Virus record (IMG/VR): IMGVR_UViG_3300031669_000001 | Location: 248,001-312,000 of that record | DNA length: 64,000 bases | Strand: one strand, 5' to 3' | Part shown: piece by piece, positions 13,613 through 63,522 of the stretch | Position numbering within the stretch: position 1 is the first letter of the stretch | Layout of the letters: every line of letters starts with the position of its first letter | Program-made: the position numbers and the translations under genes | Notes under the pieces: generated by a model | What the model was told of the DNA's origin: nothing | What the model saw: the letters and a program-made list of their open reading frames with translations, nothing else | Databases searched by the model: none

Positions 13613-14077
13613 TCATTTTGCCCTATACCCTACTCTTAGATTTGCAGGAACGTGAGACATGATCCACTTGTCCATACCATTTCCCACCTTTTCACCAATT
13701 TGATCCATTTCAAACACAGCGAATCCATCCATCTCTGGAAAGTTAGGACCTTTCAGATTCTCTACCATTGAGATACACTTCATGATCCGAGTGTCGATCT
13801 TTTCAACCTCGATGTAATAGAGGTGAAGGTCTTTCTTATTATCGTAATCGTGCTGACCGAGATCGATTACCGAATCGATACCAAAGAAGATTTCCAAACC
13901 TGTCTCTTCAAATAGTTCACGCTTCGCAGCTGCGAAGTGATCTTCACCTTCATCAGCGGCACCTTTTGGAAGATCCCACCTATTTCCAGTGTTTGTTGGA
14001 TGACAGAGTAGCCAGCCGCTAGGAAAACCGTTCTTTGTTTCTGCTATGATGAATCCACAACTGCATTTATTTTTCAA
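13613..14077 (-). CDS. nudE: Nudix hydrolase, T4 NudE-like
   Basis: RWDLPKGAADEGEDHFAAAKRELFEETG Nudix box; KDLHLY and PEMDGF segments as in NudE. Confidence 0.85.
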   Translation of the reverse strand: MKNKCSCGFIIAETKNGFPSGWLLCHPTNTGNRWDLPKGAADEGEDHFAAAKRELFEETGLEIFFGIDSVIDLGQHDYDNKKDLHLYYIEVEKIDTRIMKCISMVENLKGPNFPEMDGFAVFEMDQIGEKVGNGMDKWIMSHVPANLRVGYRAK

Positions 14078-16100: not shown

Positions 16101-16485
16101 CGTCACTTCCCTTCTTAATCGCATCCTCGATTTTATCCCAGCTGGATCCGATTAACACCATGCTGAGAATGACGATCACTCCTAAGAACCAATGGTCGTA
16201 CCATACGAGAACTCCAGCGAGCACCAAGTCGGTGTAGTTGAACAGCTTTGACAACTTTGAACGTGAAGATTTAGCCTTGACTAACATCTCCTTGCCCGTG
16301 TCAGTGGTGATCGCGATGCTGCTGAAGAATAATATCCAGATAAAAAACACCATCAAGTTGTAAGCGCCTGCAACATTCTTGACAATTGCAAAGTAGACCA
16401 GCACCCACATGATAACGTTGTAGACTGTCTGTTTTAGTTCTCTCATTTGTTTTCCTTTGGAAATTGTAAACGCGTCATTCATCAA
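16093..16485 (-). CDS. Hypothetical membrane protein
   Basis: 3-4 hydrophobic segments. Confidence 0.65.
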   Translation of the reverse strand: MMNDAFTISKGKQMRELKQTVYNVIMWVLVYFAIVKNVAGAYNLMVFFIWILFFSSIAITTDTGKEMLVKAKSSRSKLSKLFNYTDLVLAGVLVWYDHWFLGVIVILSMVLIGSSWDKIEDAIKKGSDDE

Positions 16486-17701
16486 GCTCCGCGGTGGTCT
16501 GCAAAAGGTTCAATTGACGTAAGCCAAATTGTTCACGTAGGTAGTTGCGTTCGTAGAAGCCATTGTAGTCTGGCTCCTTGCCGTCCTTCTTGTTCATGAT
16601 CAGCTTGAAGAAAGGATGGTTGTAGCCTTGCGAACCGTAAAGCAACGCAAGCTCTTTCTTTGTCTTGTTACAAACAAGTTCAAAGATGTCATTGACTGTC
16701 CAGATGATCGCATCTATCTCAGCAACCACTCGAGTTTCGATGGCGTTGATCTCGGTGATATCGCAACCTTCACCAACCAGTACCGACTTTAAGTCATCCA
16801 GAGTTTCATTCAACACCATCTCAGCGATGTCACGTTCGCGCAGGAAGGTCATTGCTTTGTGACGCTCCATGTACCAAGCAGTTTTTACCTTCAACATTTC
16901 ACCGCTTTCAAACTGAACTACTACGCCTTCAACATCTGTAGTTTCTTCAATGTAGCGCTTAACGCCCTCGGGATTGTCAAACATCTTCTTGAGGTGATCG
17001 AGTTCAGTTACAACAGGGATATAAAACGATTTTGCAGTTACTTCCAACTCTGCGGTCTTAAAGTATTCACCTGTAACGTTGTGACGAATGTGCAACAAGG
17101 TCAATGAATCGTGCTTGTAACCTATGACTATCCGTGCAACTGGGGAAGTCCACTCGAAGATAGCAGTGAGATCATTCTCAACGCACCAATTGCAAAAATC
17201 GCCGTAGCGTGGATAGGCAAAGGAGGAAGAGAGGAGAAAGGAAGGAGAAGGAGTTGCAGTTTCAGCTAACATCAAGAAGCCCTTAGCTTGGTGTGCAACG
17301 TCAGACACGTAGCTCTTCTTTGACTTTAAATCAAAGTTGAGGTTACTTGGCCATAATTTGTCTGTATTCTTTACAGCGACTGTGTGGATCATTGAACCGT
17401 CGCGCTTGTCCATCACGCGAACAACCTTGGACCAGTCGATATTCTCAAAGAGCACATCTTGATTCTGATTCAGGTTGCTAAATTTGTGAAGTGGGCGGGC
17501 AATTACTTTGCCGTCTTTGAATACGATGCCGCGAGCTTCACGAGAGTACATCTCGTCGAAGGTACCATCGCAAGAGACGATGTAGGAACAAACGACAGTT
17601 CCATTATCTTGGTCCATGAAGCGAATTTCAGGCTTGTGAGCGACAGCCTGACGCATTGCCAAGTCATCAGTAAGAACTGGAAATACCAAATCGTTGCTCA
17701 T
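16475..17701 (-). CDS. rnlA: RNA ligase 1 (T4 Rnl1-like)
   Basis: EARGIVF, RPLHKFSNLN, motif I KRDGSMI, FEWTSP..RIV, EGVVVQF...LKVKTAWY. Confidence 0.9.
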   Translation of the reverse strand: MSNDLVFPVLTDDLAMRQAVAHKPEIRFMDQDNGTVVCSYIVSCDGTFDEMYSREARGIVFKDGKVIARPLHKFSNLNQNQDVLFENIDWSKVVRVMDKRDGSMIHTVAVKNTDKLWPSNLNFDLKSKKSYVSDVAHQAKGFLMLAETATPSPSFLLSSSFAYPRYGDFCNWCVENDLTAIFEWTSPVARIVIGYKHDSLTLLHIRHNVTGEYFKTAELEVTAKSFYIPVVTELDHLKKMFDNPEGVKRYIEETTDVEGVVVQFESGEMLKVKTAWYMERHKAMTFLRERDIAEMVLNETLDDLKSVLVGEGCDITEINAIETRVVAEIDAIIWTVNDIFELVCNKTKKELALLYGSQGYNHPFFKLIMNKKDGKEPDYNGFYERNYLREQFGLRQLNLLQTTAELDE

Positions 17702-22898: not shown

Positions 22899-23219
22899 TC
22901 ATGAATAGAAAAGTCTGAAGTAGCGTTTTTTGTCGCTGTTTATCAAATACGTCAGAGGCGCGATATCTTCCCATAAGACACCAGAAGGATCGTGAATTTC
23001 ATCACGCTTATCAGGAAACAATATCCTGCAGATTTGGCGTATTTGTCCGATCGTAGTCGTTTCAGGAACGATAATAGCGGCACTCTCATTGAATGAGATC
23101 AAGGTAATGCAGATACCATCAGGCATGATGCCGAGAACGTATTTTGTTCGGAGAAGCTTATTAGCTTCTTCCAAATCAAAGAACATTCCCTCTCTAGTTT
23201 CTAGTGTAATCTTGCTCAT
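22899..23219 (-). CDS. Hypothetical protein
   Basis: 106-aa ORF coupled to the topoisomerase stop. Confidence 0.6.
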   Translation of the reverse strand: MSKITLETREGMFFDLEEANKLLRTKYVLGIMPDGICITLISFNESAAIIVPETTTIGQIRQICRILFPDKRDEIHDPSGVLWEDIAPLTYLINSDKKRYFRLFYS

Positions 23220-25150
23220 TATTCAAAGCTGCTGAAGTAGTTAATATTGTTTAGCCATTCTTTGCGCTCGTCTGCTTGACTTCCACGGAAGGCGAGTTCT
23301 AATCCCTTGAAGTCTACATCTTCGAGCTTGCCAACTCGGCAGAGGTAGCTCTCACGATTTTCCAGAATCTGTTTGAATCGTGCGGTCTTGAACTTACCAA
23401 GTCCTTTGAAACGAGCAGCTTCATGCTTAGGAGCAGTCTTGGCCCACTCTTCGTAGGATTCGTCAGTCATGAACTCGATCTCCTTACCCTTGACCGTTGC
23501 AATGACCAGCGGGGTGTTCATGCGGTATATGATGCCGAGTTCGAAGAGCTCTGGCCAGAAGTAAGCGAAGAAGTTTATGAGCAGAGAACCAACGTGGAAG
23601 CCGTCCAAGTCTTGGTCGGACAAGATGATGATCTTACCGAACCGAAGGTCTTTCACGCTCTTGACTGGAACACCAATCTTCAAGCCTGTGATCTTCAGGA
23701 TGCTCTTGATCTCGTTGTTGCCGTTGTCTTCTTTTTCCTTATCTTTTTTCTTACCGCCGATTACTCGCTTCAAGTCCACATCCATGACGTTCAACGGTTT
23801 CCCCTTTAACGCGAAGCTGCCAATGTAAGGGTTCTTTCCGCGAGCTTCATGAATTGACTTACGAGCTGAGTCACCTTCTGTCAGGTAGAGTTCGCAAAGG
23901 TGACGGTGATGATCTTCCATCGCGTCAGAGAACTTGTCAACGCGCCGCGGGTTACCCTTGTCGATGTCCTTGCTAAGTTCTTTCAATTGACGCATCTCTT
24001 CAGCTTTAGCTTTCGCTTCTGCCCAAAGCAGAACGCGATCAACGATGCCAGAATCGATGACTCGCTTGATAAACTTGTCCGTTGGTTCCCATGCAGTCTT
24101 GTATTCTTTGATCTCGGTGATCAGATTTTCTTTGGTCTGCGAATCATAGCGAGGGCGAACTATTGACGCGTTGATGAACACCTGCATGTGAGCTTGAATT
24201 TGAGTAGGGATAACGTCAATCTTGTGCTTCTTGTTGATGTACTCACGGAGTTTCACTGCGATCTGAGACCAGACGTAAAATAGGTGGGTACCACCTTGCA
24301 AAGTCTCCGTAGTGTTGACGAATGAGACGTGCTGAAATCCATCGTCAGAAGCCGCAACACCGATCTGCCAGTTACCATTATCGTCATACTCAAACTTGTC
24401 AGTGTAGAGGCTGATGTAATCTTTGAATGAAGCGATCCGGATCTGTTCGCCGTTAAGATACACCTTCAGCTTAGGATTACACCCAGCTACATCGTAGACT
24501 CTCTTCACGAGTTTGCTATAGTTGTCATCATCAAGCTTGGTATCTATGTGGGCGTAATCTGGTGTGTAGGTAATCTTGGTGAAGCCTTTACCATTACCAT
24601 CAGTGATCTTTGGATCGGTCTTATCCATCATGTTGTTAGTCCAAGTTTGCTTGAACTTCTTCTTGCCGTCAGAAGATTCAACGGTGAAGGATGTGGAGAA
24701 GATGTTGGTGAGAGATGCACCTTCACCATTTTGGCCTGCGCCTGTTGAGTCTTCAGTATCGTCGAAGTTTGAACCTGAACGCAGGTAACCAAAGATCAGA
24801 GTTGGGACGTACTCGTCATATTCTTTATGCTTGACGACTGGAATTCCACCATTATCCCAAACCGTTATCTCGCCTGTAGGCTGATCAATGTCAACTTTGA
24901 TGACGTCCAGGTGCTTTCCTTCTGGACGCTTTGAGTGATCGACTGCGTTTGAGATGACTTCATCGAAAAGCTTGATGAGGCCAGGATTGTAGGTTATCTC
25001 TCGCTTGGTCATAGATGAACCATTCAGGATCACCCAAGATTCAGCTGTGTGGGGTTTGACTGAGCCAATGTATCGACCTGGTCGAATCAGAACATGCTCA
25101 ACATCTGAGAGTTTACGATATGTAGTTTCAATTGTTTTATTTTTTGTCAT
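23219..25150 (-). CDS. Type II DNA topoisomerase large subunit (T4 gp39+gp60 equivalent, GyrB-like)
   Basis: RPGRYIGS, FDEVISNAVD, GQNGEGA ATP lid; TEGDSA; TOPRIM SDQDLDGFHV; RFKGLG. Confidence 0.95.
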   Translation of the reverse strand: MTKNKTIETTYRKLSDVEHVLIRPGRYIGSVKPHTAESWVILNGSSMTKREITYNPGLIKLFDEVISNAVDHSKRPEGKHLDVIKVDIDQPTGEITVWDNGGIPVVKHKEYDEYVPTLIFGYLRSGSNFDDTEDSTGAGQNGEGASLTNIFSTSFTVESSDGKKKFKQTWTNNMMDKTDPKITDGNGKGFTKITYTPDYAHIDTKLDDDNYSKLVKRVYDVAGCNPKLKVYLNGEQIRIASFKDYISLYTDKFEYDDNGNWQIGVAASDDGFQHVSFVNTTETLQGGTHLFYVWSQIAVKLREYINKKHKIDVIPTQIQAHMQVFINASIVRPRYDSQTKENLITEIKEYKTAWEPTDKFIKRVIDSGIVDRVLLWAEAKAKAEEMRQLKELSKDIDKGNPRRVDKFSDAMEDHHRHLCELYLTEGDSARKSIHEARGKNPYIGSFALKGKPLNVMDVDLKRVIGGKKKDKEKEDNGNNEIKSILKITGLKIGVPVKSVKDLRFGKIIILSDQDLDGFHVGSLLINFFAYFWPELFELGIIYRMNTPLVIATVKGKEIEFMTDESYEEWAKTAPKHEAARFKGLGKFKTARFKQILENRESYLCRVGKLEDVDFKGLELAFRGSQADERKEWLNNINYFSSFE

Positions 25151-27250: not shown

Positions 27251-27258
27251 TATTTATA
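27251..27258 (-). promoter_or_regulatory. Late promoter (perfect T4 consensus)
   Basis: TATAAATA. Confidence 0.75.
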
Positions 27259-27517
27259 GGAAGAATGGGGAATACTCTATCCCCCAACCATGCTCTAGGT
27301 CAAGACTTGCATCTTTGTAAGCTTGCCCAAAGTTTGAATTTCCAGACTGAGTCATTCTAAAAATTTGATCCTTTTTGATTTCTCGAATGCTAACCTCTAC
27401 CCACTCACCATCTTGAAAAATTTCAAAAACGGATTTATTGGTTGTAGGCTTTTTCTTTTTAACGTCAACATTCTTAACATCAATCGGTACAATCTTTTGC
27501 TCTGTTTTTGTGATCAT
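27254..27517 (-). CDS. Hypothetical protein
   Basis: 87-aa ORF. Confidence 0.55.
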   Translation of the reverse strand: MITKTEQKIVPIDVKNVDVKKKKPTTNKSVFEIFQDGEWVEVSIREIKKDQIFRMTQSGNSNFGQAYKDASLDLEHGWGIEYSPFFL

Positions 27518-27520
27518 GAT

Positions 27521-28210
27521 TTAATCCTTAAATGTGTAAGAGAGTCTGGTCAGACCGCCGCTGATGCGCTCCAGCTTTAGATTTTCACGTTTGAGATGCC
27601 CATAGAATACAGGCAACATCACATGACGATCTAAGATGAGGTACTTTTTAGTTCCTACAGGGCCAGCGAGAAGATCTTCAAAGTACTTTTCCTCTGATCT
27701 CTTGTAAGCAACTGGACAGGCAACCTTCAGTTCCTCTATCTTGCTCTTGCTAATGTTGGCAAAGTTCTGAGGAATCAAAAGCTTCTTGGATCTCTCTGCC
27801 TTCTCGAATAGCTTCAGTGTTCGATAGAAGTACTTCAGCGAGGCTGGAACCTCATCGATTCCAAGCATGAAGTTGGTGTACTTCTCGCCCTCACGCTGCG
27901 CGCTTTTGATCTCAAAGACCGGTTCACCATTCACGAAGCAATCTATTGAACTTGATGATCCACCCAACTCAATGTCATCAAAGATGAAGTATACCAATAC
28001 CTCACCTCGACCTAACCTTGAACCAAGGTGTGGGACGTTTCCGTGAATATCGTATAGAGCAGATGCAAAGGTTGGAAAATCAGCGATGAAGTTTGTGATC
28101 GTTGAAACTAATTTGTCATCATCAAACTTCGTGCAATGTGAGAGTGGATCATCCTTACCATTGAAGTGCTTCAGTAATCTTTCCCGAATTTGCTTCTTCA
28201 AGTTATTCAA
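27521..28210 (-). CDS. Putative PD-(D/E)XK nuclease-like protein
   Basis: GRGEVL...SSIDC...FEIK spacing is typical of restriction-endonuclease folds. Confidence 0.4.
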   Translation of the reverse strand: MNNLKKQIRERLLKHFNGKDDPLSHCTKFDDDKLVSTITNFIADFPTFASALYDIHGNVPHLGSRLGRGEVLVYFIFDDIELGGSSSSIDCFVNGEPVFEIKSAQREGEKYTNFMLGIDEVPASLKYFYRTLKLFEKAERSKKLLIPQNFANISKSKIEELKVACPVAYKRSEEKYFEDLLAGPVGTKKYLILDRHVMLPVFYGHLKRENLKLERISGGLTRLSYTFKD

Positions 28211-30721: not shown

Positions 30722-30955
30722 CTATTTACTCTTTCTATTCCTTCGACGAGATTTTTGGGATAGCTTGCGCAGTCGCTTGCGATTTGATGGTTTCGGTTTG
30801 CCTATAGGTCCTACATAATCCTGCACGCTGCCATTTATGATGTTGTCGTCATCGTTCCTGATTCTTAATGGATAGATAGGAACATCTTCGTAGATTGGAG
30901 GCGCACAAACTACTGACGCGATAGCTAACATTGCTAGAGTTTTTTGAATTGTCAT
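30722..30955 (-). CDS. Hypothetical protein; its 3' end contains an AGTAAATA late-like box (30723-30730)
   Basis: 77-aa ORF with a basic tail. Confidence 0.5.
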   Translation of the reverse strand: MTIQKTLAMLAIASVVCAPPIYEDVPIYPLRIRNDDDNIINGSVQDYVGPIGKPKPSNRKRLRKLSQKSRRRNRKSK

Positions 30956-31401
30956 TCTGCTACCCTATCAATGCTTTCGAGAAATTTTGTTTGTAAGATG
31001 TGACGGATTGAATAGACAGCTTCAATGTATGCAAATCGATAAGGATATGAACGAGTGTGATACTTGACGCGAGTGCTGAGAGAAGCGTTGAGGTAAACTT
31101 TCTTTAACTTCTTTGCAGCCTCTATTGCAGCGTCGAGACATTCTGAGTGCAAAACGCGGACTAAACGATCTTCCTCACTCATCGGGTTAAATGTGCCGTA
31201 GACTCGCTTGATTCTCTCGATTGTTTTTGAGGCCTTAAGCTCTGCAATTTCAGCTTCAAGTTCCTCGATTCGACTCAACAGTTGATAACGTTCTGATTCT
31301 TGTTGCTCACATTCCTGAACAGCGGCCGCACCGTGTCGTGGGCAATCTGGATCTTCCGCGATGAAGCGTCCACCAATTTGATAGCATTCACAACTGTCCA
31401 T
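30952..31401 (-). CDS. Hypothetical protein (CxC...CPxH N-terminus)
   Basis: 149-aa ORF after the promoter at 31431. Confidence 0.6.
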   Translation of the reverse strand: MDSCECYQIGGRFIAEDPDCPRHGAAAVQECEQQESERYQLLSRIEELEAEIAELKASKTIERIKRVYGTFNPMSEEDRLVRVLHSECLDAAIEAAKKLKKVYLNASLSTRVKYHTRSYPYRFAYIEAVYSIRHILQTKFLESIDRVAE

Positions 31402-36693: not shown

Positions 36694-38178
36694 TTACGCG
36701 TAGGTGGTATCTGCCCGTGCCCAAGACTGTACTTCATCGAAGTCTTGGAAGCGTTTTTGCGCACCATCTTTTGACCACAATCTCCAGCCAGGACCATCAA
36801 CGAAGAAGGAAGCTGGGTTGGCAGTGCAATCACGAACCTCCAACTCACCGCTTTCCAGTTCGAAAGGACGAACCAAACCACGCAGAGACTTCTTGCCCAG
36901 GTCGGTGATTGGTTCTTTAACCAAAGACCTCCAACCGTTTGCATCCATCATCGCGATTGCCTTCATGCTGAAGCTGAAGTCATCGCGAGCACCTTCGTGG
37001 GTAACACCAGCACCCATACCCAAGGTCAGGCTGTCCATGCTGTAACCTTTGCTAGTGAATCCTTCCAGCACTGGCTCGATGGTGTTGATGCGGATTCCAT
37101 CACCTTGGATGACGGCGGTGCAAGGTGCCAAGACCTTGTAACCGGCTGCATTCTTGTGGACACCGAAGGTATCTTCGATGTCCTTTGCGACCCGCGCCGG
37201 CTCAACAGTTGCATCGCCAGAGTCAGGACGCATGACCATCACACCACCACTGTTCTCGATCTCTTCGCGGAAGGTTTCACCCATGTACTCACGAACGAAG
37301 CGGCGAGCATTGTAGGTGTCGATAACGACGCTCAACAGTGGGATGCCTATGCCGCGCTTAGTACGAGCAACAACGGCGTGCAGGCGTTTCACTGCCATCT
37401 TCGCGGCGCCGAAGTCATCACGCTTGTCAGCGTCGCTGTGCGCGCACATTACGCTGTGCTCAGTAGCTTCAACGCTTGAGGTGTATGGCTTGTTGGAGAA
37501 AACGGTGTTCTTGTTGAACAGAGCTTTGATGTAACTGTTTGCGCGAGTGCAATCGCTACCATCGAACATCGCTGCGTGAGCGATACCCGCGATGACAGCA
37601 GCTTCATCTGGACTGTCTGCACCACGATCGCCGAAGTTGTGCAGCTTGTAATTCAGCATTCCCATGTTGGCGCCGGTCTTCTGCATGTACTTGGCGATGA
37701 TGATGCGAGCTGCGCGGCAGGTACTTGCTACGGTAGACATCTTCCAGACGGTGCATTGAACGACAGTCTCGACATAAGTAGGCAACCAGGCAAAGAGATC
37801 GTGAGTATTGACGATACCCAGCACTGGAGTTTGAGGCTTGACGATACGACCTTCTTCAACTGCCCATACTTCCAGCGGCAGCTTGCCGTCCAAATAGTCG
37901 ACCATGTACTGCCAGTCGGCGCGGTTGAATTCGTATCCTTGTTGGGTGATTTCGATATCAGCTTCATCGACCATCCACTGTTCGATGCGCACTGAAGCCA
38001 AAAAGTTTGCTACGTAGGTTTGACCCATCGCGACGATCTTATCTGCGTACTTGCTGGGTTTACGTGGAACGATAGCTGCGTAAGAACGCAGAGTTCCGTC
38101 GGGCAATTCTTGCCAGTGACCAGCTTTGTAGCTGTCGCAGGCCAGAATAAAGTTGAAGCGCTTTATCATTTGTAACAT
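36694..38178 (-). CDS. nadV: Nicotinamide phosphoribosyltransferase
   Basis: DSYKAGH, LHNFGDRG, EATEHSVM, SVVIDTYN, VMRPDSGD, VIQGDG, GMGAG, KEPITDLGKKS. Confidence 0.95.
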   Translation of the reverse strand: MLQMIKRFNFILACDSYKAGHWQELPDGTLRSYAAIVPRKPSKYADKIVAMGQTYVANFLASVRIEQWMVDEADIEITQQGYEFNRADWQYMVDYLDGKLPLEVWAVEEGRIVKPQTPVLGIVNTHDLFAWLPTYVETVVQCTVWKMSTVASTCRAARIIIAKYMQKTGANMGMLNYKLHNFGDRGADSPDEAAVIAGIAHAAMFDGSDCTRANSYIKALFNKNTVFSNKPYTSSVEATEHSVMCAHSDADKRDDFGAAKMAVKRLHAVVARTKRGIGIPLLSVVIDTYNARRFVREYMGETFREEIENSGGVMVMRPDSGDATVEPARVAKDIEDTFGVHKNAAGYKVLAPCTAVIQGDGIRINTIEPVLEGFTSKGYSMDSLTLGMGAGVTHEGARDDFSFSMKAIAMMDANGWRSLVKEPITDLGKKSLRGLVRPFELESGELEVRDCTANPASFFVDGPGWRLWSKDGAQKRFQDFDEVQSWARADTTYA

Positions 38179-38224
38179 GTCAATCTCCTTGACGTTGTGG
38201 TTAAAAAGCGGAGTCTATCTCCAC
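38176..38224 (-). promoter_or_regulatory. Structured 5' leader of nadV (AUAGA hairpin, CAACGU, SD-sequestering hairpin)
   Basis: GTGGAG-ATAGA-CTCCGC TTTTTAACCA CAAC GTCAA-GGAGA-TTGAC ATG. Confidence 0.65.
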
Positions 38225-38323
38225 TTGGTGGTTACTACTCTTTACTGCCTCTTCTATCAGATGCACCCGCGTTGAACATCAAGATCAACGCAACTGCAAC
38301 TAAATAAATTCCAAACCAAATCA

Positions 38324-38683
38324 TTACAGCCCCATAAACTTTGTGATTAGGTAGAACGGCCAAACTTTTTCCCAAAGCAAATGTTCAAGTGGGAATCCCA
38401 TCGTTAAACCTGCCCAGAATTGCCAGTTCATCAACATCGTTTTGCAACTGTGGTAACACTTTATAGCGAAACCTCGATCATCTATATGATAGTGAGGTTC
38501 TTGTGGGATGTAATCAGCTCTCATAATTTTAGGTGGGGCTGGAATTCTTCCAGCCTTTATTAGCTCTTGTTCCATTACATCCAAGGCTTCTCTACTCAAT
38601 TTTTCACCTCTGCAAACACTACATGAACACGTAAAAGAATGTTGTGTGCCAAATAGAGTCGTACTGCGAGCTGTGTCAATCAC
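38324..38683 (-). CDS. Hypothetical membrane protein
   Basis: C-terminal WQFWAGLTMGFPLEHLLWEKVWPF. Confidence 0.6.
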   Translation of the reverse strand: MIDTARSTTLFGTQHSFTCSCSVCRGEKLSREALDVMEQELIKAGRIPAPPKIMRADYIPQEPHYHIDDRGFAIKCYHSCKTMLMNWQFWAGLTMGFPLEHLLWEKVWPFYLITKFMGL

Positions 38684-38853
38684 AATGATGTCCTCTTCTT
38701 AACTCTTACGTTCTGCGTCTTCAGCAGCTCTTGAAATTCTTTCTTGATGTCATCACATGACTTGTTTGCTTCGGTGTACACGACATCGTAGAATCGATAT
38801 TTTCCACCGGTGCTACCGTTTTTCGGTACAAACTTGATCTCATAGAATGGCAT
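38680..38853 (-). CDS. Hypothetical protein (start MPFYEI)
   Basis: 57-aa ORF. Confidence 0.45.
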   Translation of the reverse strand: MPFYEIKFVPKNGSTGGKYRFYDVVYTEANKSCDDIKKEFQELLKTQNVRVKKRTSL

Positions 38854-38870
38854 TTGAAGTATTATAACAC

Positions 38871-39113
38871 CTATTCTAATGGAAGTACATACCTTTTTTG
38901 GAACTGGAATCCTTCTCCGCGAAGGTAACATCCAAGATATGGACCTCTTTGACCTGGATCACGAGGGAAACCTTCTTCGAACAGCTTAACTTCTCCATAT
39001 CCAAGAGAGTTCAGCCAAGTTTGAAGTTGATCTTTAGTCAAGATATAGTCGTCAAGGTCTTGCCACTCTGTAACGGGAGTATCACAAAACACTCGACGAC
39101 TCTGGTACGTCAT
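38871..39113 (-). CDS. Hypothetical protein
   Basis: 80-aa ORF coupled to the ATP-grasp stop. Confidence 0.55.
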   Translation of the reverse strand: MTYQSRRVFCDTPVTEWQDLDDYILTKDQLQTWLNSLGYGEVKLFEEGFPRDPGQRGPYLGCYLRGEGFQFQKRYVLPLE

Positions 39114-39922
39114 CTCTCCATCCCTTCCAACGCCATCACTATCTCCATCACGTTTCCTGCGTAGAAGCCAGATGCATTGATGGTGTTGATCTCTACTATC
39201 TTCATGCCGTCAGGAGTCTCACAGACGTCAAGTACGTAAGCTCTGTGCGGTTGCCATGCACTCGTTGTCATGCTCAAGGTGATATCACCAAAGCGGATAA
39301 CTTGGGCTGCAAACCAACGCACCGCGTCATCAACGACAGGTGAATAGATCACGCGATTGCCTCTTTTGTAAAGAGAGGCTGTAACAATTTTCTTATCGAC
39401 TATCCAAAAACGGTACTCAGCAAAGATCTTCTTTGGAGTGCAGACTTGGACGAGAGTGCTAGGCATTAAGCTGTTACCGTAGTCCAGTTCCAACACGCAA
39501 ACGTTACGCTGCCAATCCTGAAATTCTTCCCACTCAAAGACCCGGCCAGCGAAGACCTTCGAGTCCTCGATAGGACGAATGAACCGCGGCTCATCATCAG
39601 TCCAATGCACGTCTTTGAACTGAACAACTTTAGCGTCAGCGTTCAGCATCATGTCACCCCAATGCTGCAATTGAATCTCAAAGTTGATAGGCTCGAGATC
39701 ATACACTCCTGGGTTCCAGTTGTTTGCCTTTGCTGCATGACGCATCGAGTATGATCCAAAGCAGATAACTTTGTCCTGCTTGGGTTCAGCGGGCGGTACC
39801 AACTCACCGATGAAGGGTACTACCTTGTGAATAGAGTATGGAATCTTGAAGCGATCCAGCGTTCCAACCAAGTTATCCCACTCGGCTTCATTGAACAAAT
39901 TTGTTTGTAAAATCCAGTGCAT
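39110..39922 (-). CDS. ATP-grasp domain protein (DUF4343/R2K-like)
   Basis: FIRP...K.F.G.V; EYRFWIV; YVLDV...KIVEIN..NASGFY. Confidence 0.8.
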   Translation of the reverse strand: MHWILQTNLFNEAEWDNLVGTLDRFKIPYSIHKVVPFIGELVPPAEPKQDKVICFGSYSMRHAAKANNWNPGVYDLEPINFEIQLQHWGDMMLNADAKVVQFKDVHWTDDEPRFIRPIEDSKVFAGRVFEWEEFQDWQRNVCVLELDYGNSLMPSTLVQVCTPKKIFAEYRFWIVDKKIVTASLYKRGNRVIYSPVVDDAVRWFAAQVIRFGDITLSMTTSAWQPHRAYVLDVCETPDGMKIVEINTINASGFYAGNVMEIVMALEGMER

Positions 39923-39986
39923 TAGCAGAATACCGAGTAGATCATCATTAACAACGAAATCGTTACGAAGATTGTGATGAAGAGTT

Positions 39987-40223
39987 TCATCCTAGTTTCC
40001 TTAACATGTTTGCGACGCTGTCCTTTGGAATGCAATCTGGGTCGCTCTTTCCACTAGCGACGAGGTTATCAATTCCTCTTTCAATGATCATCTTCCGGCC
40101 AATTGTGTTCATTGCCCGCATCGCGGTGAATATTCTTTCTGTTGTGATGGAGTTGTGACGCTTTGGATCTAGTCCATTAGCTTCATTGTAAATTTGCGTC
40201 AGCTCTTCATTTGTGAACAACAT
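39987..40223 (-). CDS. Hypothetical protein
   Basis: 78-aa ORF. Confidence 0.55.
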   Translation of the reverse strand: MLFTNEELTQIYNEANGLDPKRHNSITTERIFTAMRAMNTIGRKMIIERGIDNLVASGKSDPDCIPKDSVANMLRKLG

Positions 40224-40255
40224 CTTTCAATCCTTTCAATCCTCTGGGATCGTGT

Positions 40256-41413
40256 TCATAATTTCCCCAGCATGTACTCGATGATGAAGTAGTGATCTTC
40301 GAAGAACATCTCAGGGCTCTTCATCACTTCATCCAATGGAACCCACCAGGCCTTCTCAGCATCATCGTCACCCTTAACCTTCGGCAGCGATATCTTGCCG
40401 TCTACTACGAAGTCAGGCAGCTTAAACAAAAATCCCTTGGTGACAGTGCGACCGCGTAAGGAACGTTCAGGATAATCGAAGTCTTCTTTGAAGATCATCG
40501 AGCTGCGCAGAATCGGTTCAGGAACCTTGATGCGAGTCTCTTCACGCAGTTCACGGATTGCAGCTTCAAACAATCGTTCTTTGGGGTTCAAGAAGCCTCC
40601 AGGCAGCGCCCACAAACCTTTTCCAGGACGGCTACGACGTTTAACCAGCAGCACGTGACCAGTTTGGATGACGATTGAATCAACCGTCTGGAAGATTGGT
40701 TCGTAGCGAAGACCGGGATCATTTTGACCATAAGTTCCAGGATCACGTGGTATGTTCGGTTTACGATACTCGATGTTGAAGAGATGCTCTTCACGCAGGT
40801 TGTCGTAGAATGGAGTCTCTTCGAAAGCGCGAAGCTCATTAATCGTTTCAGCTGGCAAGAATGCGTTCAATAACAATTCTGCGTGGTTAGCGGTGATCTC
40901 GTTGCCATCGAATGAACGGCCAAAGTAGATTTCACGGACTGCGGTGGCGGTCAAGAAGCGACTGACTTCCATATTTTCATCGACCATGTCAGCGATGAAG
41001 TTAGGAAAGTACTTCAAGTAGAACGTTGAGGAATCACGATCAGCACCAGTGATTCTGATCTCAATGTCTTTGGGATTGAGTTTGACTTGCTCAGCGCTAT
41101 CAACGAACTCGTTGATCACCTTGTTAACGTTTGCTATCCAAAGTTGATCATTGTAGGGGAAGTCTCGAATGCCACGCACTGATACCGGTGCATTTTTAGC
41201 GTGTGGAGTCCAAGGACGAGATGCCCACTTATCAATGACGCTTGCACGTTCTTCAAACGTCCAGGGATTTTTGGGATTTCTTGCTTGATTGATGGAACCG
41301 ATGAGGACCAGCACAGCGTCCGAGCGCTCACGTGCTCGCTTCAGAACTTCTGCATGTCCATTGTGGAATGGGGAAAATCGACCGATGTACACGGTCAGTA
41401 CAAACTTAGCCAT
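40256..41413 (-). CDS. natV: Bifunctional NMN adenylyltransferase / ADP-ribose pyrophosphatase (NadM-Nudix, NatV)
   Basis: YIGRFSPFHNGH, KNPWTFEER, D.PYNDQLW; Nudix box GLWALPGGF...E.L.EAAIRELREET; DDAEKAWW; FFEDH. Confidence 0.95.
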   Translation of the reverse strand: MAKFVLTVYIGRFSPFHNGHAEVLKRARERSDAVLVLIGSINQARNPKNPWTFEERASVIDKWASRPWTPHAKNAPVSVRGIRDFPYNDQLWIANVNKVINEFVDSAEQVKLNPKDIEIRITGADRDSSTFYLKYFPNFIADMVDENMEVSRFLTATAVREIYFGRSFDGNEITANHAELLLNAFLPAETINELRAFEETPFYDNLREEHLFNIEYRKPNIPRDPGTYGQNDPGLRYEPIFQTVDSIVIQTGHVLLVKRRSRPGKGLWALPGGFLNPKERLFEAAIRELREETRIKVPEPILRSSMIFKEDFDYPERSLRGRTVTKGFLFKLPDFVVDGKISLPKVKGDDDAEKAWWVPLDEVMKSPEMFFEDHYFIIEYMLGKL

Positions 41414-41457
41414 AAGAGCTCCTCTTACGTTGGAAAGTGTGAACGTCTATCGTTCAC
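41411..41457 (-). promoter_or_regulatory. Structured 5' leader of natV (AUAGA hairpin, CAACGU, SD-sequestering hairpin)
   Basis: GTGAACG-ATAGA-CGTTCAC ACTTTC CAACG TAAGAG-GAG-CTCTTA TG. Confidence 0.65.
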
Positions 41458-41468
41458 TGCATATTTAC

Positions 41469-41497
41469 ATCTTAACACATATTTGAGAAAAAGTACA
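41469..41497 (-). promoter_or_regulatory. Early promoter for natV
   Basis: TGTACT-N17-TAAGAT. Confidence 0.65.
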
Positions 41498-58551: not shown

Positions 58552-58599
58552 TTCGTCAGCACGCTGGCGAACCAACGTGCTAGTTGTTAGATTTCTTTA

Positions 58600-58936
58600 A
58601 TAAGGTAGAAAGCTTTCACCCTCTATTCTAAACCTCAGGCAACAATTAAGCTGCCAGAGCCAGAGCTCCGTTTGCGTCGTTTGCATTTACATGCTTGTCA
58701 GATTTACGGTCTGTACTCACCGAGTTGTAAAATTAAGGTACGTCCCTACTCAATCGAAACCAGGTACACCCCCATTAGGGGGCACTAGTTACTTTGATCC
58801 GACCTGGGTTCAGGTGTTAATGCGAATCAGGGAGCTCTAGTGCTCGGTGGAGGTGGGGAGAATCGAACTCCCGTCTTGCGCAGCTTTCGCTTTTTCCTTT
58901 CAGCAGTTTCCTGCCATACAACCATCTTTACTACTT
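58600..58936 (-). ncRNA. ssrA: Circularly permuted (two-piece) tmRNA gene; outer ends approximate
   Basis: The T-arm GGGAG-TTCGATT-CTCCC and acceptor strand CACCTCC-A-CC (58875-58846) come BEFORE the 5' strand GGGGGTG-TACCTGGTTTCGA (from 58773). G3:U wobble present; pk1-like CGGT/ACCG + CAG/CTG; tag ORF 58684-58646 ANDANGALALAA*. Confidence 0.93.
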
Positions 58937-58942
58937 GAATCC

Positions 58943-62818: not shown

Positions 62819-63211
62819 TTACAGCAACTTAAGGTGCCCAGTTATCGCGTTAATCTTATCATTCTCTGCAGGACCAACAGAAATGCATGTATTGGTTGGA
62901 ACTCCACTGAATTCTGTTAACCCACTATCAGTGATCAGCGAGCAGGTTATTCCAGCAGCTTTAGCCTTCTCTAATAGTTCAAGAAGCTCGGCTTCACTGT
63001 TAACACCGCAACAGATCTTCTTGAACACTCCTTTCATGAGCCACTCATCCATCTCAGGCGTAAGTGGGATCATGAGGTAACGTGCTCCTCCATTGGCAAC
63101 AAAAACACTTCCACTATCAACAACGGGTTTCATAGAAGCGTGAGAACCTTGGGCTACCATCTTACCCTTGCGCATGTTGAGGTCGGTCCTCATTACAATG
63201 ACCTGTTTCAT
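62819..63211 (-). CDS. pth2: Peptidyl-tRNA hydrolase, Pth2 type
   Basis: MKQVIVMRTDLNMRKGKMVAQGSHA, KKIC..V.SE.EL, ITDSGLTE, TC..VGP, ITGHLKLL. Confidence 0.95.
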   Translation of the reverse strand: MKQVIVMRTDLNMRKGKMVAQGSHASMKPVVDSGSVFVANGGARYLMIPLTPEMDEWLMKGVFKKICCGVNSEAELLELLEKAKAAGITCSLITDSGLTEFSGVPTNTCISVGPAENDKINAITGHLKLL

Positions 63212-63522
63212 TCGTATGAATCTGCCTGTACGAGGATAACTTGGAATTGATTTTTACCAAGCTTGATGTTAACGCATGAATCACCAACTATCAGCTTTGT
63301 GCCGTCCCAACCTTTCTTGCGAAGTCTAACTCCACGCTGAATCTCATCCCAGCGCTCGCGTTTTTCCCTCACAAACTTTCTATTTCCTTCTCGGTTTATC
63401 TCGGCACTTTTCTCAGGATTCTTACGGCGCCAGCGAGCATTTGCTTTTCCACCCGGAGTTTCAGGACGTATTTCGCCTTTACGAGGGCGGCCTTTTTTGT
63501 AGCCAGTAGGTTTGTAAGCCAT
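63208..63522 (-). CDS. Basic protein with AT-hook-like KKGRPRK
   Basis: 104-aa ORF with its own promoter. Confidence 0.55.
   Translation of the reverse strand: MAYKPTGYKKGRPRKGEIRPETPGGKANARWRRKNPEKSAEINREGNRKFVREKRERWDEIQRGVRLRKKGWDGTKLIVGDSCVNIKLGKNQFQVILVQADSYE

What the first reader, a model, noticed from the sequence alone, without database searches (positions are those of the whole stretch)
38176..41457. Both NAD-salvage genes share a candidate cis-regulatory leader RNA (AUAGA hairpin, CAACGU, SD-sequestering hairpin)
Seen, minus strand. nadV: GUGGAG-AUAGA-CUCCGC-UUUUUAACCA-CAAC-GUCAA-GGAGA-UUGAC-AUG (38224-38176). natV: GUGAACG-AUAGA-CGUUCAC-ACUUUC-CAACG-UAAGAG-GAG-CUCUUA-UG (41457-41411). 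The stems differ in sequence but pair fully around an identical 5-nt loop. Both have a U-rich linker, the same CAACGU, and a second stem hiding the Shine-Dalgarno next to the start codon. I did not notice this architecture before other genes, and I do not recognise it as a described NAD+-I/II riboswitch. Inference: an NAD/NMN/ADP-ribose-responsive translational switch, either a small riboswitch or an operator bound by a protein such as NatV itself, coupling salvage-enzyme synthesis to NAD depletion by host defence.
Basis: partly seen in the sequence, partly recalled or inferred. Interest (0 to 1): 0.85.

Follow-up and report, generated by a model that had tools for sequence, protein, structure and literature searches.

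The report
Conserved leader RNA before NAD genes
Both NAD-salvage genes of this jumbo phage carry the same two-hairpin RNA leader, which is a widespread and apparently undescribed regulatory RNA found before NAD-supply genes in many phages and bacteria, and is a strong candidate for a new NAD-related riboswitch or translational operator.

Summary
Upstream of nadV (38173-38229, -) and natV (41408-41461, -) lies a bipartite leader. H1 is a hairpin of free sequence closing on G-AUAGA-C. A G-poor linker of about 10 nt follows. H2 is a hairpin that holds the Shine-Dalgarno in its loop and ends at or over the AUG.

A covariance model finds only these two sites in the 64-kb window. It finds 138 sites in 96 viral loci (all on the gene strand) and 88 in 80 bacterial loci (87 on the gene strand), spanning Gamma-, Alpha- and Betaproteobacteria, Campylobacterota and Cyanobacteria. 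It also finds the motif before both genes in three cultured phages.

A protein-blind DNA scan gave 54 of 60 NadV/NatV genes downstream when both helices were present, and 0 of 68 when neither was. Other genes behind the leader are nadA, an SPFH gene and small unknown phage ORFs.

It is not an Rfam family, a terminator or the NrtR DNA operator, which lies separately upstream in bacteria. CAACGU is not conserved.

The best reading is a translational control leader for the NAD regulon. Whether a metabolite or a protein reads H1 is unresolved.

The parts
38206..38226 (-). nadV leader H1: 8-bp stem (AAGUGGAG/CUCCGCUU) closing on the loop AUAGA with a G-C closing pair
   Evidence: Sequence; hairpin scan; MFE fold; CM hit 38173-38229 at 47.7 bits.
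38194..38205 (-). nadV leader linker, 12 nt with no G (UUUAACCACAAC)
   Evidence: The family linker has 6.6% G against about 21% background.
38179..38193 (-). nadV leader H2: GUCAA-GGAGA-UUGAC, with the Shine-Dalgarno in the loop and the 3' arm abutting the AUG at 38178-38176
   Evidence: -4.6 kcal/mol. H2 pairs covary in the family.
36694..38178 (-). nadV, nicotinamide phosphoribosyltransferase, 494 aa
   Evidence: Pfam NAPRTase and NAMPT_N.
41439..41457 (-). natV leader H1: 7-bp stem (GUGAACG/CGUUCAC) closing on the loop AUAGA
   Evidence: CM hit 41408-41461 at 41.2 bits.
41430..41438 (-). natV leader linker, 9 nt with no G (ACUUUCCAA)
41411..41429 (-). natV leader H2: CGUAAGAG-GAG-CUCUUAUG, with the SD half paired and half in the loop, and the AUG (41413-41411) inside the 3' arm
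   Evidence: -6.7 kcal/mol.
40256..41413 (-). natV, bifunctional NMN adenylyltransferase / Nudix ADP-ribose pyrophosphatase (NadM-Nudix type), 385 aa
   Evidence: Pfam CTP_transf_like and NUDIX.
41469..41479 (-). Weak candidate extended -10 promoter (TGTGTTAAGAT) ending 11 nt before natV H1. Inference only.
   Evidence: Read. It resembles the TGTGATATAAT element that recurs before other genes in the window. The strict promoter scan did not call it.

Best explanation
The two sites are copies of a conserved 5'-leader RNA that controls translation initiation of NAD-supply genes.

Anatomy (shown). H1 is a hairpin whose stem sequence is free but whose loop is A-N-A-G-A, closed by G-C. A linker of about 10 nt that avoids G follows. 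H2 is a marginally stable hairpin, about -4.5 kcal/mol, that pairs the purines of the Shine-Dalgarno, displays GGA in a 3-5 nt loop, and ends 0-2 nt from the AUG or over it. Both hairpins are the default fold, and no competing anti-sequestering structure exists.

Mechanism (inferred). H2 damps 30S binding, and H1 is the sensor. I favour direct binding of an NAD-pool metabolite, with NAD+ or a fragment such as NMN or ADP-ribose as the obvious candidates. The metabolite would bind a pocket formed by the H1 loop docking on H2 or the linker. That would lock H2 and repress translation when NAD is plentiful. Translation would rise when the pool falls, for instance when a host NADase defence fires during infection.

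The phage carries this portable RNA module on both of its NAD-reconstitution genes, without the bacterial NrtR DNA operator.
For: Structure:
- Seed alignment: 92.6% of cells pair, against 54.5% in shuffles (0 of 500 reach it) and 29-45% when partners are slid; 12 of 13 pairs show double changes.
- 130 sequences: 93.4% against 53.6%.
- RNAalifold on the MAFFT alignment recovers both helices.
- Ascertainment-free: 50 of 150 GATAGAC sites have a stem of 5 bp or more, against 0-2 for six of seven control heptamers and 13 of 135 for the seventh.
- In 45 instances chosen without regard to stems, H1 pairs 1-6 are 80% Watson-Crick, and the H2 pairs not fixed by the pattern are complementary in 45, 45, 41 and 41 of 45.

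RNA rather than DNA: 138 of 138 viral hits and 87 of 88 bacterial hits are on the gene strand. The loop is asymmetric. At the two pairs next to the loop, G-U outnumbers A-C 10 to 0.

Pathway specificity: 106 of 118 CM hits precede NadV or NatV. In the protein-blind pattern scan, 54 of 60 matches with both helices precede NadV or NatV, and 0 of 68 with neither. Further members are nadA twice and an SPFH gene.

Breadth: cultured phages of Ruegeria, Xanthomonas and Synechococcus, and bacteria of several phyla. Loop positions 1, 3, 4 and 5 are invariant across all of them, as expected when the partner is an invariant molecule.

Expression platform: H2 stability is -4.5 +/- 1.6 kcal/mol. H1 is in the MFE in 116 of 130 leaders and H2 in 125 of 130.
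Against: - No binding or expression experiment exists, and the ligand is a guess from the regulon.
- Conserved nucleotides confined to a terminal loop, with free stems, is the classic look of a protein-binding hairpin (MS2, boxB, IRE). Most riboswitch aptamers instead conserve junctions and internal loops.
- About 7 invariant nucleotides is very little for a cofactor pocket.
- I found no covariation or complementarity supporting an H1-H2 or H1-linker tertiary contact.
- The CM-based invariance is partly imposed by the model.
- nadV H1 in the window is followed by UUUUU and could also act as a weak terminator.
Confidence: 0.45

Rival explanations
1. Protein-dependent translational operator. H1 is bound loop-specifically by a protein, most plausibly a product of the regulon itself (NatV/NadM-Nudix or NadV) whose RNA affinity depends on its substrate state. 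The bound protein stabilises or covers H2. This would be autogenous control, like the T4 gp43 and gp32 operators, the MS2 coat protein operator, thymidylate synthase, or the IRE/IRP system.
For: Free stems with an invariant loop and closing pair are typical of protein-hairpin recognition. The motif always travels with natV and nadV in phages, usually on both genes. No alternative RNA fold is present, so a trans partner is needed. There are precedents for NAD enzymes fused to regulators: NadR and NrtR, described in PMC2330246.
Against: The loop is unchanged across phyla and across proteins only about 30-40% identical. Protein-RNA pairs usually drift, as the NrtR boxes do between lineages (PMC2330246). 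NadM and NadV have no known RNA-binding activity (own knowledge). The regulon extends to nadA, an SPFH gene and small ORFs.
Confidence: 0.3
2. Non-sensing expression element. H1 protects the 5' end or sets mRNA half-life, the G-poor linker acts as an S1 or standby site, and H2 merely tunes the translation rate. No signal is sensed.
For: In many phage copies H1 starts 1-25 nt after a TTGACA-N17-TATAAT-like promoter. The linker is A/U/C-rich.
Against: A stabiliser needs no invariant loop and no pathway specificity, yet the loop is invariant and the motif is essentially restricted to NAD genes. In bacteria H1 lies well inside the leader, about 70-90 nt after the NrtR-box promoter region.
Confidence: 0.1
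3. H1 acts in transcription, as an intrinsic terminator or attenuator between upstream genes and nadV or natV.
For: In the window, nadV H1 is followed by UUUUU and sits 8 nt after the stop codon of the upstream ORF.
Against: The terminator scan did not call it. natV H1 and most family members lack a U tract, with about 33% T in the linker. Many copies lie directly after promoters.
Confidence: 0.05
4. H1 is the DNA operator of the Nudix-related repressor NrtR, which regulates nadM-nadV and nadA in bacteria.
For: NrtR is encoded divergently next to motif-bearing nadM in three bacterial loci and regulates the same gene classes (PMC2330246).
Against: A separate symmetric 21-bp palindrome with conserved arms (TTAGTGGC-N5-GCCACTAA) lies about 70-90 nt upstream of H1 in four bacterial loci. 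H1 arms are not conserved, its centre is asymmetric, and its orientation relative to the gene is fixed. The window has no such box.
Confidence: 0.02
5. H2 is an RNA thermometer of the fourU type, and H1 is incidental.
For: H2 is a marginally stable, A-U-rich hairpin over the SD.
Against: A thermometer gives no reason for restriction to NAD genes or for an invariant H1 loop.
Confidence: 0.03

Closest known systems
NAD+-I (nadA motif) and NAD+-II (pnuC motif) riboswitches
   Same: They are cis-acting 5' leaders of NAD biosynthesis, salvage or uptake genes. nadA is a shared target class. NAD+-II also works by hiding the Shine-Dalgarno (PMC7749635 and PMC10085692 abstracts).
   Different: No match to any Rfam model, even at E <= 10. 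The architecture differs: two simple hairpins with a conserved terminal pentaloop, rather than bulged tandem domains (NAD+-I) or a pseudoknot with a triple helix (NAD+-II). The main targets here are nadV and nadM. As of 2023 the literature counted only two NAD+ riboswitch classes (PMC10702441 abstract).
Guanidine-II riboswitch (mini-ykkC)
   Same: Layout, from my own knowledge: two small hairpins of free stem sequence with conserved loops and closing pairs, joined by a variable linker, with the ribosome-binding site at the second hairpin.
   Different: Its loops are ACGR tetraloops, identical in the two hairpins. Here the loops are ANAGA and GGAGN and are not complementary. There was no Rfam hit. 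The ligand class and the regulon are unrelated.
NrtR regulon and operator (Nudix-related transcriptional regulator)
   Same: The same regulated genes (nadM-nadV, nadA; PMC2330246). NrtR is encoded next to several bacterial copies of the leader.
   Different: NrtR binds a symmetric 21-bp DNA palindrome at the promoter. That box is found separately, upstream of the leader, and is absent from the phage window. The leader is strand-specific RNA.
Phage and cellular translational operators read by proteins (MS2 coat protein hairpin, T4 gp43/gp32/RegA operators, lambda boxB, IRE)
   Same: A hairpin with an arbitrary stem and a sequence-specific loop sits next to or over the ribosome-binding site. This may be how H1 is read.
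   Different: No cognate protein is known. The motif spans many phage lineages and bacterial phyla with an unchanged loop, unlike lineage-restricted operators.

Membership tests
NAD+-I / NAD+-II riboswitches (Rfam nadA and pnuC families) | Match to the family covariance model (conserved sequence and secondary structure) | tested here: not met
   No gathering-score hit in the window. No such hit at E <= 10 on either window leader or on the best phage and bacterial members.
NAD+-I / NAD+-II riboswitches (Rfam nadA and pnuC families) | Direct binding of NAD+ or its ADP or NMN moiety | not testable with these tools
   Needs in-line probing or ITC.
Riboswitch (generic) | Conserved structured element in the 5' leader, supported by covariation | tested here: met
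Riboswitch (generic) | Association with genes of one metabolic pathway across distant taxa | tested here: met
Riboswitch (generic) | Expression platform coupled to the sensor | tested here: inconclusive
   H2 occludes the SD and AUG. No alternative fold or H1-H2 contact could be shown.
Riboswitch (generic) | Protein-free ligand binding and ligand-dependent control | not testable with these tools
   This is experimental.
NrtR DNA operator | Symmetric 21-bp palindrome with lineage-conserved arms at the promoter, independent of orientation | tested here: not met
   H1 arms vary freely. Its orientation is fixed. A distinct NrtR-type palindrome lies upstream, and none is present in the window.
Intrinsic terminator | G+C-rich stem directly followed by a U tract | tested here: not met
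   Not called at either leader. The family linker is about 33% U with no tract. Only nadV H1 in the window has UUUUU.
Guanidine-II (mini-ykkC) | Two hairpins, each with an ACGR tetraloop | tested here: not met
   The loops are ANAGA and GGAGN. No Rfam hit.
Protein-bound translational operator | Loop-specific hairpin next to the ribosome-binding site | tested here: met
Protein-bound translational operator | Identified cognate RNA-binding protein | not tested
   No candidate beyond co-occurrence with NatV and NadV. Needs EMSA or pull-down.

The most novel reading that the evidence does not exclude
This is a third, structurally unrelated class of riboswitch for the NAD pool, sensing NAD+ or a fragment such as NMN or ADP-ribose. 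It would be built from only two hairpin loops. It would be widespread in bacteria and repeatedly captured by phages to gate their NAD-reconstitution counter-defence genes according to the NAD level of the infected cell. The same leader would also mark unknown small phage proteins (phrog_12218, phrog_33851) as new players in NAD warfare.
Probability: 0.35. Interest if true: 0.9.

Novelty: new variant of a known kind. Interest (0 to 1): 0.8.

Why it matters
NAD depletion is a major bacterial anti-phage strategy, and nadV plus natV form a phage pathway that rebuilds NAD. That statement is from my own knowledge of the NARP2 literature and was not checked here.

A dedicated sensor-like RNA on exactly these genes, shared with bacterial nadM, nadV and nadA, would mean that NAD salvage is gated after transcription in both hosts and phages. 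In bacteria it adds a second control layer on top of NrtR.

If the RNA binds a metabolite, it is a new and unusually small riboswitch class that could serve as a compact biosensor. If it binds NatV or NadV, it is a new case of an enzyme moonlighting as a translational repressor.

Either way the motif is a search handle. It already points to several families of unknown small phage proteins as likely NAD-related.

Tried and rejected
- Megablast of the region against cultured phages found no match.
- Rfam at gathering and permissive thresholds found nothing relevant.
- CAACGU as a motif is rejected; it is not conserved in the alignments.
- PnuC as a regulon member is withdrawn. The L024 hit has a GGAGU loop in place of ANAGA.
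- L303 (DUF3383) has a weak H1 and is judged a chance match.
- The NrtR operator reading is rejected.
- The terminator reading is rejected for the family.
- An H1-loop pseudoknot with UCUAU or CUAU in the linker appears in only a few related sequences by eye, and is not conserved.
- An anti-SD-like CUCC in the nadV H1 3' arm that could pair with GGAG has no counterpart in natV.
- My ad hoc regex detector for penetrance was too strict; it missed L049. I used the CM tables instead.
- The NrtR paper holds no supplementary text, so its site sequences could not be read.
- Literature probes (nadV+riboswitch+phage; nadV+natV; NAMPT+riboswitch candidate+phage; NAD+ riboswitch+class III; nadA motif/pnuC motif/nadV; GAUAGAC; nadM+riboswitch) found no description of this element.
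Full report
**What is in the window.** The window belongs to a 345-kb viral contig, IMGVR_UViG_3300031669_000001. On the minus strand, nadV (36694-38178; Pfam NAPRTase and NAMPT_N) and natV (40256-41413; cytidylyltransferase-like and NUDIX) are separated by an R2K ATP-grasp gene and small ORFs.

Each gene is preceded by three elements:
- H1, a hairpin of 8 bp (nadV) or 7 bp (natV) with the loop AUAGA closed by G-C.
- A G-free linker of 12 nt (nadV) or 9 nt (natV).
- H2, a second hairpin that holds GGAG in or next to its loop and ends at the AUG (nadV) or includes it (natV).

Both leaders fold this way as the MFE and centroid structure, with z = -3.0 and -3.4 against dinucleotide shuffles.

**Is it more than chance, and is it specific?** On the gene strand these are the only ATAGA-loop hairpins in the window with a stem of 6 bp or more. 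Hairpins over the SD are rare among the window's other genes. The family covariance model, run with filters off, scores the two sites at 47.7 and 41.2 bits. Nothing else in 64 kb exceeds 13.8 bits (E = 0.68).

**The motif is a family.** Upstream regions of nadV and natV homologues from other viral contigs showed the same arrangement with entirely different stem sequences.
- Among all fetched loci, stems closing on ATAGA were three times as common as for any permutation of the same letters: 60 against 7-29.
- About 55 non-redundant full motifs were collected. Nearly all of them precede NadV or NatV homologues that are only 30-69% identical to the window's proteins.
- On a MAFFT alignment of 53 leaders (A3), 92.6% of cells pair. 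Shuffled partners give 54.5% (0 of 500 shuffles reach the observed value) and slid partners give 29-45%. Twelve of 13 pairs show double compensatory changes.
- RNAalifold recovers both helices on its own.

**Controls for circularity.** I had picked the seed by requiring stems, so I ran two checks that do not depend on that choice.
- Of all 150 GATAGAC heptamers in 756 kb of loci, 50 carry a stem of 5 bp or more. Six of seven control heptamers give 0-2; the seventh, GAAGTAC, gives 13 of 135.
- In 45 instances selected only by a DNA pattern and the downstream protein, H1 pairs 1-6 are 80% Watson-Crick. The H2 positions left free by the pattern are complementary in 45, 45, 41 and 41 of 45.

**Breadth.** The covariance model R1 finds 138 sites in 96 viral loci, all on the gene strand, typically one before natV and one before nadV.
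- In cultured phages it precedes both genes in Roseobacter phage DSS3P8, Xanthomonas phage LucasX and Synechococcus phage BUCT-ZZ01. It is absent or very weak in Salmonella phage Munch and Stenotrophomonas phage DLP_6.
- It is not phage-specific. In 80 bacterial loci fetched through NadM-Nudix homology there are 88 hits, 87 on the gene strand. They cover Gammaproteobacteria (Budvicia, Cellvibrio, Psychrobacter, Pseudoalteromonas, Marinicella, Thiothrix, Hahella, Methylomonas), Campylobacterota, Cyanobacteria, and Alpha- and Betaproteobacteria.

**Consensus over 130 confident hits**.

| Element | Observation |
|---|---|
| H1 closing pair and loop | G (95%), A (100%), U (91%; C, A or G tolerated), A (100%), G (100%), A (100%), C (98%) |
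| Linker | Median about 10 nt; 6.6% G against about 21% background |
| H2 | (A/G)A-GGA-N-Y-U(U/C), plus 3-4 freely covarying pairs; 0-2 nt to the AUG in most copies |

These frequencies come from a model-driven search, so they lean towards the model. Psychrobacter copies carry an extra hairpin inside the linker.

**Pathway specificity.** Of 118 CM hits examined, 106 precede NadV or NatV/NadM. The remainder include the following:
- NadA (quinolinate synthase), in one bacterium and one viral contig, each with a genuine GATAGAC hairpin.
- An SPFH/Band_7 gene in a bacterium.
- Several families of small phage ORFs of unknown function: phrog_12218, phrog_33851 and an L116/L075 family.

A PnuC case was withdrawn because its first hairpin has a GGAGU loop.

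A protein-blind scan of viral and metagenome collections used a bare DNA pattern. It gives a clean contingency table:

| Helices present | Matches | Preceding NadV or NatV |
|---|---|---|
| Both | 60 | 54 |
| Neither | 68 | 0 |

**What it is not.**
- It is not an Rfam family, neither the window copies nor the best-scoring phage and bacterial members.
- It is not a terminator. Neither H1 was called as one, and the family has no U tract.
- It is not the NrtR operator. I took this rival seriously because NrtR (Nudix plus NrtR winged-helix domain) is encoded divergently next to motif-bearing nadM in three bacterial loci, and it regulates nadM-nadV and nadA (PMC2330246). However, a separate symmetric 21-bp palindrome with conserved arms (TTAGTGGC-N5-GCCACTAA) lies about 70-90 nt upstream of H1 in four bacterial loci. 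H1 has non-conserved arms, an asymmetric centre and a fixed orientation. The window has no such box.

So bacteria combine a DNA operator with this RNA leader, and the phage carries only the RNA.

**How it probably works.**

Shown:
- H2 pairs the 5' purines of the SD and abuts or includes the AUG.
- Its stability is narrow and marginal, -4.5 +/- 1.6 kcal/mol.
- H1 and H2 are the default fold in 116 and 125 of 130 leaders, with pair probabilities of 0.83 and 0.90, and no conserved competing structure.

Inferred:
- H2 damps initiation.
- The invariant H1 loop is read by a partner that modulates H2.
- Since no alternative RNA fold exists, the switch needs a trans-acting molecule.

Two partners fit. 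A metabolite of the NAD pool (riboswitch) is favoured by the unchanged loop across phyla and phages, the pathway-restricted regulon and the portability of the element. A protein is favoured by the anatomy of free stems, a specific terminal loop and very few conserved nucleotides. The obvious protein candidates are NatV/NadM or NadV acting autogenously.

I put the riboswitch reading at about 0.45 and the protein operator at about 0.3. I put the general statement, that this is a cis-regulatory translational leader dedicated to NAD genes, at about 0.85. The polarity (off at high NAD, on during NAD depletion by defence systems) is homeostatic logic, not evidence.

**Promoters.** In many phage copies a TTGACA-N17-TATAAT-like promoter ends 1-25 nt before H1. 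In the window only a weak extended -10 (TGTGTTAAGAT, 41479-41469) precedes natV H1. nadV has no convincing promoter and may be co-transcribed with upstream genes.

**Novelty.** Seven literature probes found no description of the element. A 2023 paper still counts two NAD+ riboswitch classes. Subscription literature was not searchable, so prior description cannot be fully excluded.

Noticed in passing
window 58555-58937 (-): The phage encodes a permuted (two-piece) tmRNA. Rfam tmRNA_permuted scores 84.5 bits at 58646-58905, and ARAGORN gives the tag peptide ANDANGALALAA. From my own knowledge, permuted tmRNAs are typical of Alphaproteobacteria, Cyanobacteria and some Betaproteobacteria, so this may hint at the host.
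   Followed up: partly
L068:2673-2996, L090:2664-2987, L283:456-779; L055:6481-6831, L004:4043-4450, L242 (124 aa); L116:2645-3001, L075:2648-3001; L010:3320-3613: Several families of small phage ORFs of unknown function sit directly behind the same leader, often just upstream of natV. They are phrog_12218 (108 aa, HTDGCGW motif), phrog_33851 (117-136 aa, FWQWGAGG motif with a coiled-coil tail), an L116/L075 family of about 119 aa, and a 98-aa orphan. They are candidates for new NAD-related phage proteins.
   Followed up: partly
L205:3087-4001 (Burkholderiales MAG), L104:1914-2804 (viral contig), L185:7671-8699: The leader also precedes nadA (quinolinate synthase) in a bacterium and in a viral contig, and an SPFH/Band_7 gene in a Pseudomonadales genome.
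   Followed up: partly
L133:3860-3880, L150:3888-3908, L185:3846-3866, L177:3847-3867: An NrtR-type 21-bp palindrome (TTAGTGGC-N5-GCCACTAA) lies upstream of the RNA leader. Neighbouring genes encode NrtR, NADAR, Tpt1/KptA, DUF4291 and a NadR-like protein, so these bacterial NAD islands have both DNA-level and RNA-level control.
   Followed up: partly
L019:8539-8586 versus window 38176-38226: A related phage (NatV 69% identical) has a nadV that is only about 30% identical to the window's. Its leader nevertheless shares an identical 22-nt stretch running from the end of the linker through H2 to the AUG. This suggests the gene was swapped behind a retained leader.
   Followed up: no
L091:4806-5339, L125:3834-4370, L232, L234 (177-178 aa); L282 (779 aa): In some contigs the motif-led nadV ORF is only an N-terminal fragment of about 178 aa, and in one it is 779 aa. 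nadV may be interrupted (intron, intein or homing element) or fused in these phages.
   Followed up: no
window, many minus-strand intergenic regions (for example upstream of the genes at 13613-14077, 16475-17701, 23219-25150, 30952-31401, 63208-63522): An extended -10 promoter-like element, TGTGATATAAT, recurs about 20-30 nt before start codons. It is probably this phage's early promoters read by the host sigma-70 polymerase.
   Followed up: no
window 39110-39922 (-): An R2K-clade ATP-grasp gene (Pfam R2K_3, phrog_7313) sits between natV and nadV. Its role relative to NAD salvage is unknown.
   Followed up: no
window about 27518-27536 (-), upstream of ORF 27254-27517: This is the only other perfect hairpin over an SD in the window (AUUUAA-GGA-UUAAAU, 1 nt before the AUG). 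It has no H1 partner.
   Followed up: no
L024:600-651: A viral pnuC is preceded by two tandem hairpins that both display GGAG in the loop, with no ANAGA loop. It may be a different leader type.
   Followed up: no
L163:5038-5132, L156:5117-5208 (Psychrobacter): Psychrobacter copies of the leader have an extra G+C-rich hairpin inserted in the linker, so the H1-H2 spacing is not rigid.
   Followed up: no
all fetched viral loci: The control heptamer GAAGTAC showed an unexpected excess of flanking stems (13 of 135 with 5 bp or more). It may be another hairpin motif in these phages.
   Followed up: no
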